From Octopus bimaculoides (taxonomy: Eukaryota), in NCBI RefSeq assembly GCF_001194135.2, contig NC_068993.1:58856214-58902132 (forward strand): a DNA stretch of 45,919 nt. The letters run 5' to 3'. Within the stretch, counting starts at the first letter, position 1. Each line of letters starts with the position of its first letter. Made by a program: the position numbers and the translations under genes. Below, piece after piece: positions 14,171 through 23,845 of the stretch. Below the pieces are notes generated by a model. It was not told the origin of the DNA. It saw only the letters and a list, made by a program, of their open reading frames with translations, and searched no databases.

Positions 14171-14288
14171 AAAATTGTGGCCTTGTGCCAATTTAATTAA
14201 TCATTATTAACTTAGAATTAAATTGTTGTCGTTGTTGTTGTTGTTTATTGGCACGATTTCACATTTTCTTTACTGATTTATTAATTAA

Positions 14289-14310
14289 TTATTATTTCTT
14301 CTACTTTCAG
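14289..14310 (+). promoter_or_regulatory. 3' splice acceptor of the giant FAT exon (exon starts at 14311, 14 nt before the ATG)
   Basis: Pyrimidine tract TTTCTTCTACTTTCAG ending in AG at 14309-14310. In-frame TAA at 14286-14288 lies upstream. Confidence 0.85.
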
Positions 14311-14324
14311 TTCAAGCCGATACA

Positions 14325-17300
14325 ATGATGCTTTCTGGCATCACCTTTCTTTGGAAGTGGTTAGTCTGGTTGTTCACTCTACACATCAGCTGCAGCTTAG
14401 CACAAACAACAATATCAATACAGCCACCTTTCCAATTCACACAGCCAAGCTACAATGCCAGCATTCCCGAAAACTCGGTGGGGAAAATCTATGTCCAATC
14501 AACGCGGAAAATGGGAATATCCGTCCGCGATTCCTCGCTGGAAGTTTCCTTCTCGATAATAAAACGAGACGATGATAGTATTTTTAAATTAGAAGAACTG
14601 TTCATTGAAGATTTTTGGTTTCTTCGGATACGAACTAACACAGGAATTCTCCCCGGCAAGCTAAATCGGGAGCTTCATGATCATTATACCCTATACATCA
14701 AAGCCGTGGCACAGAACCTGGGAGGCCTTATATTCGAGGCCGATGCTATTGTATATATATCTGTCCTTGATAGGAATGACTTAATGCCTATATTTTATAA
14801 TCCTCGATACAATATAACGCTTACTGAAGACACAGCAGTGCACAAACGCATAACGCAGGTGAGTGCATCCGATGCAGATATAGGAATAAATGCTGAAATC
14901 TATTACAGTTTTGTTGAAGCCACCAATACATTCGCTATCCATCCCACAACTGGAGTCATTACACTCACACGCCCATTAAATTATCAGGACCGAAGTGAAT
15001 ATGAACTTGAAATCCTTGCCAGTGATCGTGGGCACAAAATCAGTCATAGCCAGAGTATATCACGAGGTCGTGCTAAATTGTTCGTCACAGTTCAACAAGT
15101 CAACCTATATCCCCCAGAATTCTCAGTTGAAAATTTACCATCTTTGGTGGAACATGGCAACATCGGAACTGTTTATGCCATTGTTCGTATCGAAGATCAG
15201 GACACTGGTAATAATGGCAAGTTAAATATGCCACAGATCATCGATGGGGATCCCAATGGTTATTTCATGTTGAAAGCCGGTAAATCTCGAGAAGAGTTCC
15301 TCATTATAGTCCAAGAAAACCTTGACCGAGAAGACAGCCCTGATGGTTTTAATTTAACCCTTTATGTTTCTGATCAAGGAACACCCAGTCTAAATTCTAC
15401 AACAGTAGTCCCAGTGGACCTTCAAGACATGAATGACAATTCTCCAGTTTTCAGTCAAGCCATTTACCAGGCCAGTATTGATGAGACGGCATTGGTCAAT
15501 TCTCCTGTGATATTTATTAAGGCTGGAGATGCTGATGCTGGCAAAAATGCCAAAGTTCATTACACCATAACTGGCGGCAACGTAGATGGATATTTCCAGA
15601 TAGATCCTATATCTGGACTGATCACTACGGCATCAGTGTTGGATGCAGAGACTGTATCTGATGTGGAACTTGAAGTGTGCGCTGAGGACGAAGCAAACTC
15701 TGGGGCCAGGAAAAGCGGTGCTGCAATAGTGCACATAGATATCAAGGATTGTAACGACAACACCCCAGTGTTTAACAGCACAGGTGATATCTTTTATGTG
15801 GATGAAAACTCTCCAATTAGTAGTGTTGTCGGCCAAGTGACCGCTACAGATATTGACAAAGACGAAAATGGCTATTTCAGTTTGACCATTGCTAATATCA
15901 ACACGGTACCATTTGAAATTGAACCGTTTGCAGGGCATTTGAAGTTGACCCAAGTTCTTGATTATGAATCCATGAAGGACTCCTACATCCTCAAGATCCG
16001 TGCTTCCGACTGGGGCAGTCCATTTCGCCGAGAAGCAGAAACACAAGTTACAGTTAAGATCCGCGATGTGAATGACAACAAGCCCCGGTTTGAGAGTCTG
16101 TCGTGCATGGTTTATGTGTCATCCGACATCGAGAACGACACTGCTCTGTTGGTTGTTTCAGCCATTGACTTAGATATTACAAGTATTGTTAGTTACAGCA
16201 TTGATAAAGGGAACGAAAAGAACTACTTCTCCATTCACACAGAACGGGGCGATATATTTTTGAGTGTTCCGACAACTGAGTTGCTTGAGAGTAAATTCAC
16301 GCTGGCCATTGGTGCAACGGACGGCATCCATGCTGCTGACCCTATGGAAATGACCGTTGTTATTGTAAATAAAGAGGAAGCTGATAGACAACTCTTAGAC
16401 AACTCAGTGTCATACAGTTGCCAAAAATCTAATGCCACCAAAGTTCTTGAGAAAATGCTTTTAAAGAAGCAGAAGGATAGTGAAAATAACCAAGATTTAA
16501 TGGCTGAAATGCCAGACGAATATCGGTACAACATCAACCCTCCAGAGTTTGCTTTTGATATGCCAACTAATATTACCATCAGGGAAGATAAACCTGTCAC
16601 TTTCAGCATCTTAGAAATTCCTGTTTCTGACAGTGACCCTGGCTATAATGGTAAACTTACTTATGTTTTATCAAAGGGAAATGAGCAAGGCAAGTTTTCC
16701 ATTAGTAACGAAGGAAAATTGTACATATTATCTGAGTTAGACCGAGAGAAGAAGGATAACTATGAATTGGTCATCACAGCTGCTGACCTTGGCAAACCAA
16801 GCAAAACGGCTTCAAGGAATATCACTGTGACTGTCTTGGATGTCAATGATTGCTCACCAGTTTTTGAAAGGAACCATTACGCTGTCAATGTATCAGAGAA
16901 CATAAATCTCAATGCCACCATCACACAGGTTTATGCCACTGATGACGACACGGGGCAAAATGCTGAGATTCGATATACCATCATATCAGACACTGACGAG
17001 TTCAAAGTCGACAACCACTCCGGAATTATCCGGGTGAATGCATTGCTGGATCGAGAAAGACAAGAGGTTTATAATGTTTTAGTCCAAGCCAGTGACAAGG
17101 GATCAGAAATTTCCCTTTCATCAACAACGACCGTCACTATACATGTAACAGATATAAATGACAACTTACCGAAATTCTCTCCAGAGATTTACGACATCAA
17201 GATCCGAGAAGACTTGCCAATTGGTGCTGTGGTAACCACGCTGACGGCCTACGATCCAGATCTTGGGTCTGGCGGGGAAGTAACTTACAGCCTAATTTAT

Positions 17301-17661
17301 GGCACAGATGGTAAATTTGAAATTGATGAAATTACAGGAACGGTGAGAGTGTCACAGAAATTGGATTTCGAACAGAAACAAGTATACAACATAACAGCCC
17401 AAGCTCAGGATAATGGTGGTTCACCTCTATTGTCATCATGCTTTATCAACATCGAGGTGATTGATGTTAACGAGAATTTGTACCCACCTGTGTTTAGTAG
17501 CTTCGTTGCAATCGGTTACGTTCGTGAAGACGAACCGATTGGCACAGCTTTCATGCAAGTTTCTGCTATAGATGCAGATGCCCCGGAAGATGATCTTACA
17601 CCTATAATGTATTCCATACGAGATGGTTCTGGATTAGGACGTTTTACCATTGACAATAATG
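14325..17661 (+). CDS. FAT1/3-like: First coding exon of a FAT1/FAT3/kugelei-type giant atypical cadherin (signal peptide, 9 cadherin repeats, partial 10th); gene continues beyond the window
   Basis: 1112 stop-free codons plus 1 nt. Hydrophobic N-terminus MMLSGITFLWKWLVWLFTLHISCSLA. Repeated LDRE, A/xDxD and DxNDNxPxF motifs. Segments I recognise as FAT1/3-like: FQFTQPSYNASIPENS, DFWFLRIRT, DVNENLYPPVF, YSIRDGSGLGRF. A at -3 of the ATG. Confidence 0.93.
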
Positions 17662-17667
17662 GTAAGT
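17662..17667 (+). promoter_or_regulatory. 5' splice donor (phase 1) ending the giant FAT exon
   Basis: AAT AAT G|GTAAGT is a consensus donor. Cadherin-like sequence stops here and a pyrimidine-rich low-complexity tract follows. Confidence 0.9.
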
Positions 17668-19480
17668 CTTTCAAATTTTTCTCTTTTTCCTTATCTCTTT
17701 CTTATCCTTTTTTTTCTTTCAGCCTTTCTTTACTTCTATCTCTCCTTCTTTCTTTCTGTCCTTCAAAATTTCCTTTTCTCCTCTAGTCTTTCTGTCTGTC
17801 TGTCTTCCTTACTTTTGTCTTCCAAGTCTTTCTTTGCTCCTTTCTTTTCATTTTCATTTTAACTTCTTTAACATTACAGTGATGTACTTGCATAGCAAGT
17901 GACTTGATCTGAGATCGTGTGCTGAAACAAAAGCAATTGCAGTGTGGAAGGTGTTTANNNNNNNNNNNNNNNNNNNNNNNNNNNNNNNNNNNNNNNNNNN
18001 NNNNNNNNNNNNNNNNNNNNNNNNNNNNNNNNNNNNNNNNNNNNNNNNNNNNNNNNNNNNNNNNNNNNNNNNNNNNNNNNNNNNNNNNNNNNNNNNNNNN
18101 NNNNNNNNNNNNNNNNNNNNNNNNNNNNNNNNNNNNNNNNNNNNNNNNNNNNNNNNNNNNNNNNNNNNNNNNNNNNNNNNNNNNNNNNNNNNNNNNNNNN
18201 NNNNNNNNNNNNNNNNNNNNNNNNNNNNNNNNNNNNNNNNNNNNNNNNNNNNNNNNNNNNNNNNNNNNNNNNNNNNNNNNNNNNNNNNNNNNNNNNNNNN
18301 NNNNNNNNNNNNNNNNNNNNNNNNNNNNNNNNNNNNNNNNNNNNNNNNNNNNNNNNNNNNNNNNNNNNNNNNNNNNNNNNNNNNNNNNNNNNNNNNNNNN
18401 NNNNNNNNNNNNNNNNNNNNNNNNNNNNNNNNNNNNNNNNNNNNNNNNNNNNNNNNNNNNNNNNNNNNNNNNNNNNNNNNNNNNNNNNNNNNNNNNNNNN
18501 NNNNNNNNNNNNNNNNNNNNNNNNNNNNNNNNNNNNNNNNNNNNNNNNNNNNNNNNNNNNNNNNNNNNNNNNNNNNNNNNNNNNNNNNNNNNNNNNNNNN
18601 NNNNNNNNNNNNNNNNNNNNNNNNNNNNNNNNNNNNNNNNNNNNNNNNNNNNNNNNNNNNNNNNNNNNNNNNNNNNNNNNNNNNNNNNATGCATGTGTGT
18701 ATACGTGTGTGTATGTATACATCTATATGTGTCTGTATATACATATGTATATATATAAGTATATGCATATGTCTGTATATGTATATACTCATGTATATGT
18801 GTGTGTCTATGTATGTATATATCCATATATGTAGATATATGTATATGTGCGATATGTATGTGTATATGTGTGTATGTGTTTATGTATACATCTATGTGTG
18901 TCTATATATATCTGTGTGTATCTAAGTATATGCATATGTCTGTATATGTATATACACATATATATATATATATCTGTGTGTGTGTGTGTGTGTGTGTGTG
19001 CATGTGTTTCTGTGTGCGGGTGTGTGTGTGCTTCTGATTGTCGTGGCTGTAGAGTTATGTTATCATAAATCTGTGGAATTGTGTTCCGATCTGTTTCTGC
19101 AGACTTTAACATTCAGTTTCACTAGAAATTGTGTTGCCATTTAAAGTGTAAAAGCTTCCCCAGTTTTTCTAAAGGTTTCTTTCATTTTGTACTGGGTCGT
19201 TATTACGCTGCAGATATGTGGTAGTGGTGGCGGTGGTGATGGTACTGGATGTTGTCGTTGTTGTTGTTGTTGGTGGTGGTGGTGGTGTTGGTGGCGGTAG
19301 TGATAGGATGCTGTTGCGATGGTGATGGCAATGGAGTTGTAGATGGGGATTGTGGTGGTGTTGCTGATAATGGTACATGTTGCGTACTTGAGCACCAAAT
19401 AGAATAATCTCATTATTAACAGTTCTGGGTATGGCCATACTCATATTAGTAATAACTGTAGAATCATCATCATCATCATC

Positions 19481-19512: not shown

Positions 19513-19658
19513 TCTGAATTCAAATTCTACCAAGGTCAACTTTGCCTTTCATCCTTTCGGGATCATTGAAATAAGTACCAGTTAAATATTGGGGGTCAAT
19601 GTAATTGACTACACCCCTACTCCCAAATTTCAGACCTTGTGCCTATAGTAGAAAGAAT
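19510..19658 (+). mobile_element. SINE family B, 5'-truncated (trimer unit 1)
   Basis: GTTCTGAATTCAAATTC...TTTGCCTTTCATCCTTTCGG...CCTTGTGCCTATAGTAGAAAG. Confidence 0.85.
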
Positions 19659-19680
19659 TGTTATTATTATTATGATTATT

Positions 19681-19880
19681 AAGATGGCGAGCTGGCAGGA
19701 TCGTTAGCATGGCGGGCAAAATGCTTAGCAGCATTTAGTTTGTCTGTACGTTCTGAGTTCAAATTCCGCCGTGGTCGACTTTGCCTTTCATCCTTTTAAG
19801 TACCAGTTGTGTACTGGGGTCAATCTAATCGACCAGCCCTCTCCCCCAAAATTTCAGGCCATGTACTTATAATAAAAAGG

Positions 19881-19883
<3 letters not shown>
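19681..19883 (+). mobile_element. SINE family B, full length (trimer unit 2)
   Basis: AAGATGGCGAGCTGGCAG head, GAGTTCAAATTCC B-box-like motif, small internal deletion. Confidence 0.9.
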
Positions 19884-19919
<36 letters not shown>

Positions 19920-19921
<2 letters not shown>

Positions 19922-20133
19922 GATGGCGAGCTGGCAGAATCGTTAGCACGAGGGGCAAAATGCTTAGTGGTATTTTGTCTGTCTTTACGTTCTGAGCTCA
20001 AATTCTGCCGAGGTCAGTGTTGCCTTTCATCCATTTGAGGTTGATAAATTAAGTACCAGTTGCATACTGGGGTCGATCTAATCGACTGGCCCCCGCCTCC
20101 CCAAAAATTTTGGGCCTTGTGCCTAGAGTAGAA

Positions 20134-20134
<1 letters not shown>
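19920..20134 (+). mobile_element. SINE family B, full length (trimer unit 3)
   Basis: Colinear with unit 2; flanked by (ATT)n on both sides. Confidence 0.9.
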
Positions 20135-20169
<35 letters not shown>

Positions 20170-21616: not shown

Positions 21617-22426
21617 CACTTTTGTTACCATAGTTCTGTTGACATAAACTACATCATCATCATCATCATTATCATCATTTAATGTCCACCTTCTATGTTA
21701 GCATGGGTTGGACGATTTGACTGAGGACTAGCGAACCAGATGGCTGCACCAGGCTCCAGTCTGATTTGGCAGAGTTTCTACAGCTGAATGCCCTTCCTAA
21801 CGCCAACCACTCCGAGAGTGTAATGGGTGCTTTTACATGCCACCAGCACGATGGCCAGTCAAGCGGTACTGGCAATGGCCATGCTCAAAATGGTGTTTTT
21901 TACATGTTACCTGCACAGGAGCCAGTCCAGCGGCACTGGCAACGATCTCGTTCAAATGTTTTTTTCACGTGCCACCGGCCACAAGTGCCAGTAAGGTGAC
22001 GCTGGTAACGATCACATTCAAATGGTGCTATTTACGTGCCATTGGCACAGAAGCCAGACAGCTGCTTTGGCAACGATCACGCTCGGACGGTGCTCTTAGC
22101 GCTCCACTGGTACAGGTGCCAACACGATTTCGAATTCACTTGCCCCAACAGGTCTTCGCAAGCTGAGTTTAGTCTCCAATGAAGAAGAGGTTGGCATGAG
22201 TGCCAGTCATTGAGTTTAATTCGATTTGGAACTACCTCTGTTCCAATTAATTTTTTAAATAATGAAGGATTTAATTAAGTAACTTTGTCCTTCCTAATTA
22301 AGCTGATGTCTGGAACAAATTAACAAGAAATTTGGATGGTGGGAGATTATAATTTAGATCACTTTAAAACAATGAATCTTGTGTCGTAGAATCAGGAGCA
22401 GTCTCAGATGGTTGGTACCATAAGGA
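21617..22426. mobile_element. piggyBac-type MITE, interrupted by a family C retroposon
   Basis: TTAA at 21613-16 and 22427-30. Ends CACTTTTGTTACCA / TGGTACCATAAGGA. Internal sequence resembles 45328-45522. Confidence 0.7.
21653..22229 (-). mobile_element. Family C retroposon, long copy with internal 65-67-bp tandem units
   Basis: Same tail as other C copies; flanked by AACTAC at 21647-52 and 22230-35 (candidate TSD). Confidence 0.85.
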
Positions 22427-23152: not shown

Positions 23153-23582
23153 GTAGAGTGTGGAATATGGAATAGAAACATGAAAACAATGTCTTGGCAC
23201 TTTAAAATATTTTAAAATACCAAAATATTTTGTTAATGGTTTAGTGACATATAGATCTTATTGATCATTTTGTAGCCTGCAGTTTTTTTTTCTTTCAGCT
23301 TTAAAGAAACCTGCTGTGCTAAACATAGATGACACTTCTCTCGGCAAAAATATTTTGTTTATGAAAGCTGCAGCATTTAACCTTCAGGTTGAACAGTAAA
23401 TTTTCAAGATTTGTTTTAAGGAAAAGAAAACTAGGATCCTCAGCGTCAAGAGATATGCTATGTTCTTGGCCCCCTTAAGCTGGATTGGAATTAGAAATTT
23501 TATTTCAAAATTGAGAAGAATATTCTTATCTACTAAACGATTAATATGTGTGTGCATATACATACACATGTGTATATTTATA

Positions 23583-23845
23583 GGCGCAGGAGTGGCTGTG
23601 TGGTAAGTAGCTTGCTTACCAACCACATGGTTCCGGGTTCAGTCCCATTGCATGGCACCTTGGGCAAGTGTCTTCTGCTATAGCCTCGGGCCGACCAAAG
23701 CCTTGTGAGTGGATTTGGTAGACGGAAGCTGAAAGAAGCCTGTCGTATATATNNNNNNNNNNNNNNNNNNNNNNNNNNNNNNNNNNNNNNNNNNNNNNNN
23801 NNNNNNNNNNNNNNNNNNNNNNNNNNNNNNNNNNNNNNNNNNNNN

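What the first reader, a model, noticed from the sequence alone, without database searches (positions are those of the whole stretch)
14311..17661. Giant FAT exon would give a stop-free, endless-ORF circRNA if back-spliced
Seen: acceptor at 14310/14311 and donor at 17661/17662 give 3,351 nt, exactly 1,117 codons. The back-splice junction reads AAT AAT G|TT CAA GCC GAT ACA ATG ATG (N-N-V-Q-A-D-T-M-M), in frame with no stop. The circle would therefore encode a perpetual signal-peptide plus cadherin-repeat polymer. Known: the homologous first coding exon of mammalian FAT1 and FAT3 yields abundant circRNAs, and stop-free circles can undergo rolling-circle translation. Caveat: frame closure without a stop would arise by chance roughly one time in four, so conservation is the real test.
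Basis: partly seen in the sequence, partly recalled or inferred. Interest (0 to 1): 0.75.

Follow-up and report, generated by a model that had tools for sequence, protein, structure and literature searches.

The report
FAT cadherin exon; stop-free circle by chance
This is the ordinary giant first coding exon of a FAT-type cadherin gene; it would read endlessly if circularised, but related species show that property at about the chance rate, so it is most likely a coincidence.

Summary
AG|14311 to 17661|GTAAGT is 3,351 nt (3 x 1,117). The ATG is at 14325. A joined circle has no stop codon in the coding frame over three laps, and the junction reads FTIDNN-V-QADTMM.

The exon is the first coding exon of a FAT1/2/3-Kugelei-type cadherin: a signal peptide plus about ten cadherin repeats. 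It is homologous to the exon that forms human circFAT1 and circFAT3.

In 23 orthologous exons (molluscs, annelids, an insect-like group, vertebrates) two features are conserved: the phase-1 donor, and an acceptor 8-40 nt upstream of the ATG. Exon length mod 3 is spread 10:8:5. Only 4 of 23 (17%) close without a stop, matching the roughly 1-in-4 chance expectation.

Human circFAT1 (3,283 nt) shifts frame at the junction and stops after 27 extra codons. Human circFAT3 (3,309 nt) does close without a stop, judged from its published junction sequence. A fish- or bird-like FAT3 locus has a TGA at the junction.

Nothing in the window shows back-splicing. The flanks are long and hold inverted repeats, but these are no more common across the exon than within each flank.

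Verdict: a real, ordinary exon. The endless reading frame is coincidental and untested. Low interest.

The parts
14286..14288 (+). In-frame TAA upstream of the start codon. Any acceptor further upstream would bring a stop into the circle.
   Evidence: Translation of 14286-17663 starts with * and is then open.
14289..14310 (+). Predicted 3' splice site: a pyrimidine tract followed by CAG (AG at 14309-14310).
   Evidence: Sequence. The heuristic score is in the top 0.9% of 2,058 AG sites in the window. An equivalent site lies 8-40 nt upstream of the ATG in all orthologous loci.
14311..17661 (+). Giant first coding exon of a FAT1/2/3-Kugelei-type atypical cadherin gene. It is 3,351 nt = 1,117 codons, or 124 kDa per hypothetical lap.
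14311..14324 (+). 14-nt 5'UTR piece (TTCAAGCCGATACA). With the last exon base it reads G|TT CAA GCC GAT ACA, which has no stop.
14325..14405 (+). Start codon (A at -3) and probable 27-residue signal peptide, MMLSGITFLWKWLVWLFTLHISCSLA|QTT.
   Evidence: Sequence and hydropathy profile. The cleavage site is inferred from the -3/-1 rule and was not run through a predictor.
14406..17661 (+). About ten tandem cadherin-type repeats.
   Evidence: Pfam: Cadherin in 8 stretches, plus a CELSR2-9th-like and a FAT4-N-like match.
17662..17667 (+). Predicted 5' splice site GTAAGT, phase 1, after the first base of a Gly codon.
   Evidence: A phase-1 G|GT lies at the same aligned position in the orthologs. 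Its position in human FAT1 is confirmed by the published circFAT1 junction probe.
17662..17860 (+). A 200-nt tract that is 80-88% pyrimidine (CT-rich), immediately downstream of the donor. Its role is unknown.
6538..6712 (.). Upstream copy of an interspersed repeat. It is reverse-complementary to three copies at 19516-20169 in the downstream flank (77-82% over about 170 nt). This is a candidate intron-pairing element.
19516..20169 (.). Three copies of that repeat, 1.9-2.5 kb downstream of the donor; TRF calls a 239-nt-period tandem array over 19657-20169.
8510..8716 (.). Upstream repeat copy, reverse-complementary to 26437-26647 (83% over 211 nt). The downstream copy has a better partner in its own flank (23573-23752, 92%).

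Best explanation
Region 14311-17661 is the ordinary, deeply conserved giant first coding exon ('exon 2' type) of a FAT1/2/3-Kugelei-class atypical cadherin gene in a mollusc-like animal.

In normal expression it is spliced linearly. An upstream non-coding exon joins at the acceptor 14 nt before the ATG. The phase-1 donor after ...FTIDNN-G joins to the next cadherin exon, which lies more than 28 kb away, outside the window. The exon supplies the signal peptide and the first ten or so cadherin repeats of a very large membrane protein.

The length is a multiple of three and the 14-nt UTR piece has no in-frame stop. I read this as a coincidence of UTR-piece length, not a selected feature.

The exon has the architecture that makes its mammalian homologs circularise: a long single exon and long flanking introns holding repeats in both orientations. 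A low-level circle is therefore possible. If one forms, it would be one more circRNA with a rolling-circle ORF.

Shown: exon identity, boundary motifs, arithmetic closure, and lack of conservation of closure. Inferred: actual use of the splice sites. Untested: any back-splicing or translation.
For: Identity:
- Pfam Cadherin E = 4.7e-137.
- 639 homologs at E <= 1e-30. The named ones are fat-like, Fat 1/2/3 or FAT2; Fat4-like proteins reach only 29-30% identity.
- A neighbour-joining tree places the protein among molluscs.

Conserved architecture:
- The orthologous loci share the phase-1 G|GT donor at the same aligned site and a pyrimidine-tract acceptor 8-40 nt before the ATG. Exon lengths run from 3,283 to 3,579 nt.
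- Locus L028 reproduces human FAT1 exon 2 at exactly 3,283 nt when bounded by the published circFAT1 junction probe (PMC9274483).

Closure not conserved:
- Across 23 orthologous exons, length mod 3 is 10:8:5. Four close without a stop, and six are mod 0 but carry a stop in the UTR piece.
- A first pass on 16 lineages gave chi-square p = 0.78 for uniformity and a binomial p = 1.0 against 0.26.
- Within one clade about 80% identical in DNA (L016-L020 and L024), with the similar annelid-like loci L021-L026, the state varies among mod 0, 1 and 2.
- On the human circFAT1 circle the ORF runs 1,088 exon-coded codons, then 27 frame-shifted codons, then a stop.

Base rate: 14% of human full-length circRNAs already have host-frame rolling-circle ORFs (PMC9242994).

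Flanks: no other cadherin-coding exon lies in the 45.9-kb window.
Against: - No close relative (same genus or class) could be fetched. The best homolog is only 47% identical. A lineage-restricted constraint on closure therefore cannot be excluded.
- Human circFAT3 is stop-free at its published junction. Its 17-nt UTR piece has the same length in the two vertebrate FAT3-like loci L029 and L032. Within one FAT paralog, then, the mod-0 state is at least stable.
- Acceptors in the orthologs are predicted from sequence, not from RNA. A wrong call would shift individual mod-3 values.
Confidence: 0.85

Rival explanations
1. The exon does back-splice into a 3,351-nt circRNA at biologically meaningful levels and acts as an RNA, as reported for mammalian circFAT1 and circFAT3. 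The open frame is irrelevant to that role. This rival is compatible with the best explanation's view that closure is a coincidence.
For: - The exon is homologous to the one that forms circFAT1 and circFAT3 in human and mouse.
- It is a single long exon with consensus splice sites.
- The downstream flank runs at least 28 kb without another coding exon.
- Reverse-complementary repeat pairs span the exon, for example 6538-6712 against 19516-20169.
Against: - There are no RNA data.
- Reverse-complementary matches across the exon (9 rows) are no more frequent than within the upstream flank (11 rows) or the downstream flank (26 rows), and the within-flank pairs would compete.
- If the animal is a cephalopod, circRNAs are reported as low overall. 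Only 296 high-confidence circRNAs were found over 18 octopus tissues (PMC9699675 and its supplement).
- No report of a circRNA from the fly ortholog kugelei was found.
Confidence: 0.2
2. The circle forms and ribosomes translate it round and round. Each lap adds a 1,117-residue unit of signal peptide plus cadherin repeats, and the product is functional.
For: - The circle has an ATG in good context and no stop.
- Rolling-circle translation of stop-free circles has been shown with reporters and for some endogenous circRNAs (PMC9242994).
- Human circFAT3 shares the stop-free property.
Against: - Closure occurs at the chance rate among orthologs, and human circFAT1 lacks it.
- There is no sign of back-splicing or of cap-independent initiation.
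- Fan et al. report that concatemer products are generally unstable and degraded.
- An internal signal peptide on every lap would complicate ER translocation (my inference).
Confidence: 0.03
3. The true 5' boundary of the exon is elsewhere: another acceptor, or a transcription start just upstream. In that case the 3,351-nt circle does not exist as described.
For: - Splice-site use is not shown by RNA.
- Other AG sites with moderate scores lie 109-353 nt upstream.
Against: - The 14310/14311 site is by far the best nearby and is in the top 0.9% for the window.
- The same short-UTR-piece architecture appears in every full-length orthologous locus fetched. It is confirmed experimentally for human FAT1 and FAT3 by their published back-splice junctions.
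- The only other in-ORF AG, at 14315-14316, shifts the boundary by 6 nt and also closes without a stop.
Confidence: 0.08

Closest known systems
Human circFAT1 (hsa_circ_0001461, FAT1 exon 2, 3,283 nt)
   Same: It comes from the homologous exon. It carries a short 5'UTR piece (18 nt), the start codon, the signal peptide and about ten cadherin repeats. It ends at the equivalent phase-1 donor (...EETG|GT). The size is similar (PMC6280518, PMC9274483).
   Different: 3,283 = 1 mod 3. The frame shifts at the junction and the ORF ends 27 codons later. Circularisation is shown experimentally in human and not at all here. Reported functions are RNA-level: miRNA sponging and STAT3 binding.
Mammalian circFAT3 (hsa_circ_0000348, 3,309 nt; mmu_circ_0001746, 3,306 nt)
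   Same: It comes from the homologous first coding exon of a paralog. Its length is a multiple of 3. The published human junction reads ...RFSIDDESG-WKYDV-MDIIMGH with no stop, so it is stop-free like the hypothetical circle here.
   Different: It is an experimentally validated, abundant brain circRNA. Its UTR piece is 17 nt rather than 14. Its papers do not discuss translation; 'open reading frame' occurs 0 times in PMC10122638. A non-mammalian FAT3-like locus (L029) has an in-frame TGA right after the junction.
Rolling-circle-ORF circRNAs (for example circPSAP, circPFAS and circABHD12 in Fan et al. 2022, PMC9242994)
   Same: The defining property is the same: circle length divisible by 3 and no stop in the host frame.
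   Different: Those are much shorter (10-22 kDa per lap) and have mass-spectrometry or reporter evidence. This one would be 124 kDa per lap, would carry a signal peptide, and has no expression evidence.
Start-codon-sharing circRNAs from first coding exons, such as fly circMbl or circ-ZNF609 (from my own knowledge; not checked here beyond citations inside the papers read)
   Same: The circle would include the host gene's own start codon and a 5'UTR fragment.
   Different: Those have a stop shortly after the junction, so they make a finite product, and they have experimental support.

Membership tests
FAT1/2/3-Kugelei (fat-like) atypical cadherin gene, first coding exon | N-terminal signal peptide followed directly by tandem cadherin repeats | tested here: met
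   Pfam Cadherin in 8 stretches, E = 4.7e-137. Hydrophobic N-terminus with an SLA|Q site.
FAT1/2/3-Kugelei (fat-like) atypical cadherin gene, first coding exon | Closest homologs belong to the fat-like / FAT1-3 clade, not the Fat4/Fat clade | tested here: met
   Named hits at 39-47% identity are 'fat-like cadherin-related tumor suppressor homolog', 'protocadherin Fat 1/2/3' and 'FAT2'. Fat4-like hits reach 29-30%. In the tree, Fat4-like is the outgroup.
FAT1/2/3-Kugelei (fat-like) atypical cadherin gene, first coding exon | Conserved exon architecture: acceptor a few to 40 nt before the ATG, about 3.3-3.6 kb of coding sequence, phase-1 donor after ...ID-x-x-G | tested here: met
   23 orthologous loci plus the window. 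Human FAT1 exon 2 is reproduced at 3,283 nt.
FAT1/2/3-Kugelei (fat-like) atypical cadherin gene, first coding exon | Rest of the protein: about 34 cadherin repeats, laminin-G and EGF domains, transmembrane segment and cytoplasmic tail | not testable with these tools
   No further coding exon lies in the window. The gene's other exons are outside it.
Exonic circular RNA (back-spliced single exon) | Exon bounded by a canonical acceptor and donor that could be joined head to tail | tested here: met
   CAG| at 14310/14311 and |GTAAGT at 17661/17662.
Exonic circular RNA (back-spliced single exon) | Back-splice junction reads, RNase R resistance, or divergent-primer product | not testable with these tools
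   No RNA data are available. The window's own ORF is not on record in the assembly index.
Exonic circular RNA (back-spliced single exon) | Flanking introns that are long and/or carry reverse-complementary matches favouring pairing across the exon | tested here: inconclusive
   The downstream flank is at least 28 kb and the upstream flank at least 14 kb without coding exons. Nine cross-exon inverted matches stand against 11 within-upstream and 26 within-downstream rows. This is permissive, not enriched. 10.7% of the window is N.
Rolling-circle ORF (rcORF) circRNA | Circle length divisible by 3, no stop in a frame, and a start codon in that frame | tested here: met
   3,351 nt; 0 stops over three laps in the ATG frame.
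Rolling-circle ORF (rcORF) circRNA | Evidence of translation across the junction (Ribo-seq, junction peptide, concatemer ladder) | not testable with these tools
   No such data are accessible.
Rolling-circle ORF (rcORF) circRNA | Functional constraint: closure preserved in orthologs.
   4 of 23 close and the mod-3 spread is 10:8:5. Human circFAT1 is not closed.

The most novel reading that the evidence does not exclude
The giant first coding exon of FAT-family genes may be an ancient bilaterian circRNA-forming unit. In lineages where its length happens to be a multiple of three, it would be translated as a rolling circle into secreted N-terminal cadherin-repeat chains. Signal peptidase might re-cut these at each lap. 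Such lineages include this mollusc and, judging from its published junction, human circFAT3. The products could act as soluble FAT ectodomain decoys.
Probability: 0.03. Interest if true: 0.65.

Novelty: new member of a known kind. Interest (0 to 1): 0.2.

Why it matters
As it stands it matters little. It is a correctly spotted but chance-level numerical property of a normal exon.

Two things have some value.

First, the comparison shows that the FAT 'exon 2' architecture is conserved from molluscs, annelids and insects to humans. That architecture is a short 5'UTR piece, about 3.3 kb of coding sequence and a phase-1 donor. Whether circFAT-type RNAs predate vertebrates is therefore a concrete, testable question.

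Second, a by-product concerns human circFAT3, an abundant brain circRNA treated in the papers read here as non-coding. By its published length and junction it is a stop-free circle that contains the FAT3 start codon and signal peptide. A circRNA laboratory could check this in existing Ribo-seq or proteomic data.

Tried and rejected
- The built-in inverted-repeat finder on the whole window was dominated by N runs and microsatellites. I replaced it with BLAST of the upstream flank against the downstream flank.
- I searched for close relatives to test conservation at short distance. The protein search returned nothing above 47% identity. The window's own read-through ORF is not on record. P0038 was not on record, and the Periplaneta gene was too long to fetch.
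- My first automatic donor rule (a GTRAG pattern) missed GTAYNN donors and mis-set human FAT1 by 12 nt. I replaced it with 'first phase-1 G|GT', whose errors cannot change mod 3. The human case was fixed using the published probe.
- My automatic 'nearest good acceptor' rule failed for several annelid-like loci. These were curated by eye from the upstream sequence.
- I looked for further FAT exons in the window by tblastn and by six-frame blastp. None were found.
- Rfam at gathering threshold and ARAGORN gave nothing in the window.
- Literature searches found nothing for a kugelei circRNA or for FAT3 with rolling-circle translation. The octopus circRNA supplement names no FAT gene.
- L027 turned out to be a spliced vertebrate FAT1 mRNA contig (14.8 kb, read-through matches the protein). 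It was excluded from the exon tally.
Full report
**1. What is in the sequence**

The claimed boundaries are present. A 20-nt pyrimidine tract ends in CAG at 14308-14310, and the exon starts TTCAAGCCGATACA-ATGATG. It ends ...GACAATAATG, followed by GTAAGT at 17662.

The length is 3,351 nt = 3 x 1,117. Frame 1 from 14311 is full of stops. The real coding frame starts at the ATG at 14325. It is open from 14289 (after an in-frame TAA at 14286-14288) to a stop at 17784-17786 in the intron.

The donor falls after the first base of a codon (phase 1). On a circle that G joins TT to give GTT, followed by CAA GCC GAT ACA ATG. Three laps of the joined exon contain no stop in this frame, and the junction peptide is GRFTIDNNVQADTMMLSG.

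The only other AG inside the open stretch (14315-14316) would move the boundary by 6 nt, and that circle also closes.

**2. What the exon is**

The 1,112-residue product matches Pfam Cadherin at E = 4.7e-137 in eight separate stretches. It also has a CELSR2-ninth-like and a FAT4-N-like match. It begins with a hydrophobic segment ending SLA|QTT, which is typical of a signal peptide.

The protein search gave 639 homologs at E <= 1e-30. The named ones are 'fat-like cadherin-related tumor suppressor homolog', 'protocadherin Fat 1/2/3', 'FAT2' and 'fat cadherin', from insects, chelicerates, molluscs and an annelid, at 39-47% identity. Fat4-like proteins are at 29-30%.

Nothing closer than 47% was found, so the species and its near relatives are not in the searchable collection. 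A neighbour-joining tree places the protein within molluscs, next to a bivalve. A cephalopod origin is plausible but unverified.

The window is a draft assembly with 15 N gaps (4,904 nt in total), one of them 297 nt downstream of the donor. No other cadherin-coding exon is present anywhere in the window on either strand. The downstream intron is therefore at least 28 kb.

**3. The comparative test**

Many database hits are 1,100-1,170-residue open-frame calls. These are the same giant exon read on into the intron. I fetched 7 orthologous genomic loci by exact protein look-up: Sinanodonta, Paralvinella, Elysia, Candidula and three unnamed eukaryotic assemblies. A metagenome scan gave 62 more loci, about 25 of which hold the whole exon.

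Every full-length locus used has a phase-1 G|GT donor at the same aligned position (...ID-x-x-G|GT) and a pyrimidine-tract acceptor 8-40 nt upstream of the ATG. All candidate donors were required to be phase 1, so a wrong donor choice cannot change length mod 3. Only the acceptor call matters.

After removing duplicates above 94% identity, I curated the weaker acceptors by eye. The resulting table of 23 non-window exons reads:

| State | Count | Loci |
|---|---|---|
| Closed, no stop | 4 | L005 Candidula, L008, the L010 insect-like group, L032 |
| Length mod 0, but in-frame stop in the UTR piece | 6 | L017, L018, L021, L022, L026, L029 |
| Length mod 1 | 8 | L003, L007, L009, L016, L020, L023, L024, L028 |
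| Length mod 2 | 5 | L001, L002, L004, L006, L025 |

That is 10:8:5 for length mod 3 and 17% closed. My estimate of the chance rate is about 0.23-0.26. A first pass on 16 lineages gave chi-square p = 0.78 for uniformity.

Loci L016-L020 and L024 are about 80% identical in DNA. Across these and the similar annelid-like loci L021-L026, all three mod-3 states occur.

**4. The mammalian homologs**

The background claim is right. circFAT1 comes from FAT1 exon 2 and is 3,283 nt (PMC6280518; PMC9274483). It is also formed in mouse (PMC8261519).

Locus L028 turned out to be human-type FAT1 exon 2. The published Northern probe for the circFAT1 junction maps to AG|ATTCCCGACAGT... and ...GGTGAAGAGACAG|GTAAAT, exactly 3,283 nt apart, with an 18-nt UTR piece. 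On that circle the ORF runs 1,088 exon-coded codons, shifts frame at the junction, and stops after 27 more codons. Human circFAT1 is therefore not endless.

circFAT3 is 3,309 nt in human and 3,306 nt in mouse (PMC12216475). Both are multiples of three. The 100-nt junction target published for human circFAT3 reads ...AGG TTC AGT ATA GAC GAC GAG AGT G|GA TGG AAG TAT GAT GTG ATG GAT ATA ATT ATG GGA.... That is a 17-nt UTR piece, in frame and without a stop (PMC10122638 supplement).

Human circFAT3 therefore does have the property proposed for this window. The mouse junction has no stop in the 13 nt that the shRNA sequences reveal.

Two non-mammalian FAT3-like loci keep the 17-nt length. One (L029/L030) has TGA immediately after the junction, and the other (L032) closes. 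Within FAT3 the mod-0 state looks inherited, but stop-freeness is not strictly kept.

**5. Is back-splicing likely here?**

The architecture is permissive. It is a single long exon with consensus sites and long flanks holding interspersed repeats in both orientations.

The cross-exon inverted matches are:
- 6538-6712 against three copies at 19516-20169 (77-82%).
- 8510-8716 against 26437-26647 (83%).
- 11724-11876 against 26461-26613 (79%).

These 9 cross-exon rows are not enriched over within-flank inverted pairs, which number 11 rows upstream and 26 downstream. The best downstream copy has a better partner in its own intron.

If the animal is a cephalopod, the one systematic survey found circRNAs at overall low levels, with 296 high-confidence circRNAs over 18 octopus tissues (PMC9699675). 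No RNA evidence for this locus is available with these tools.

**6. How unusual would a stop-free circle be?**

Fan et al. found host-frame rolling-circle ORFs in 14% of human full-length circRNAs. They showed concatemer products for a few, and these were generally unstable (PMC9242994). The kind is known.

This one would be unusual only in size (124 kDa per lap) and in carrying a signal peptide on each lap.

**7. Verdict**

The functional implication is not supported. Closure occurs at the chance rate among orthologs, is absent in human circFAT1, and nothing shows that this exon circularises or that a circle would be translated.

The best explanation is an ordinary FAT first coding exon whose length happens to be 0 mod 3. 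Interest is low. The most useful by-products are the deep conservation of the exon architecture and the note that human circFAT3 is itself a stop-free circle.

Noticed in passing
outside the window: human circFAT3 junction (PMC10122638 supplement Table S4; chr11:92085261-92088570): Human circFAT3 is an abundant brain circRNA. It is 3,309 nt (3 x 1,103), and its published junction reads ...RFSIDDESG|WKYDV-MDIIMGH in frame with no stop. It therefore appears to be a stop-free circle containing the FAT3 start codon and signal peptide. Neither circFAT3 paper read here discusses an ORF, and no paper in the library pairs FAT3 with rolling-circle translation.
   Followed up: partly
L028:209-3491: This metagenome contig carries human-type FAT1 exon 2. 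Bounded by the published circFAT1 junction probe it is exactly 3,283 nt. The circle ORF is finite: 1,088 exon-coded codons plus 27 frame-shifted codons. It served as a positive control for the boundary-calling method.
   Followed up: yes
window 17662-17860: About 200 nt that are 80-88% pyrimidine (CT-rich) start right at the donor site. This could be a binding platform for pyrimidine-tract proteins or simply low-complexity sequence.
   Followed up: no
window 19516-20169, 6538-6712, 13544-13619: A SINE-like repeat of about 170 nt (...GGCGAGCTGGCAGAATCGTTAGCACG...GCTCAAATTCCGCCGAGGTC...) is present here. TRF calls a 239-nt-period array over 19657-20169, and the unit begins with an (ATT)n run. 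ARAGORN and Rfam do not call it a tRNA.
   Followed up: partly
window 6783-7024, 21662-21899, 40362-40553, 43851-44011; and 8510-8716, 11724-11880, 23573-23752, 26437-26647, 30906-31049: Two further interspersed repeat families have copies in both orientations on both sides of the exon.
   Followed up: no
window 6034-6132 and 44996-45241: An (ATAG)n microsatellite lies upstream and its reverse complement (TCTA)n lies downstream, 39 kb apart. These are a long complementary pair spanning the exon.
   Followed up: no
window: 15 N runs, e.g. 11935-12821, 17958-18688, 32849-33729: 10.7% of the window is assembly gap, including one 297 nt downstream of the donor. Repeat and intron analyses are therefore incomplete.
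   Followed up: yes
window 28379-28794: A purine-rich (AATGA/GAATG)n-type satellite with periods of 12, 36, 48 and 112 nt. GC skew is +0.60 over 28001-29000.
   Followed up: no
L029/L030 and L032 (vertebrate FAT3-like loci): The 17-nt 5'UTR piece keeps its length and the core AGAATGAT across these two loci, and human FAT3 also has a 17-nt piece (GATGGAAGTATGATGTG). It contains an out-of-frame upstream ATG. This may be a conserved translational-control element rather than anything to do with circles.
   Followed up: no
L027: This 14.8-kb contig from an ENA assembly is a spliced vertebrate FAT1 mRNA, not genomic DNA. The reading frame continues through the exon 2/3 junction and matches the FAT1 protein.
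   Followed up: partly
window 15633-16046 and 16235-16609, minus strand: Antisense ORFs of 137 and 124 codons lie inside the exon. They are probably a by-product of the coding strand's composition. They had no separate homology hit in the six-frame search.
   Followed up: no
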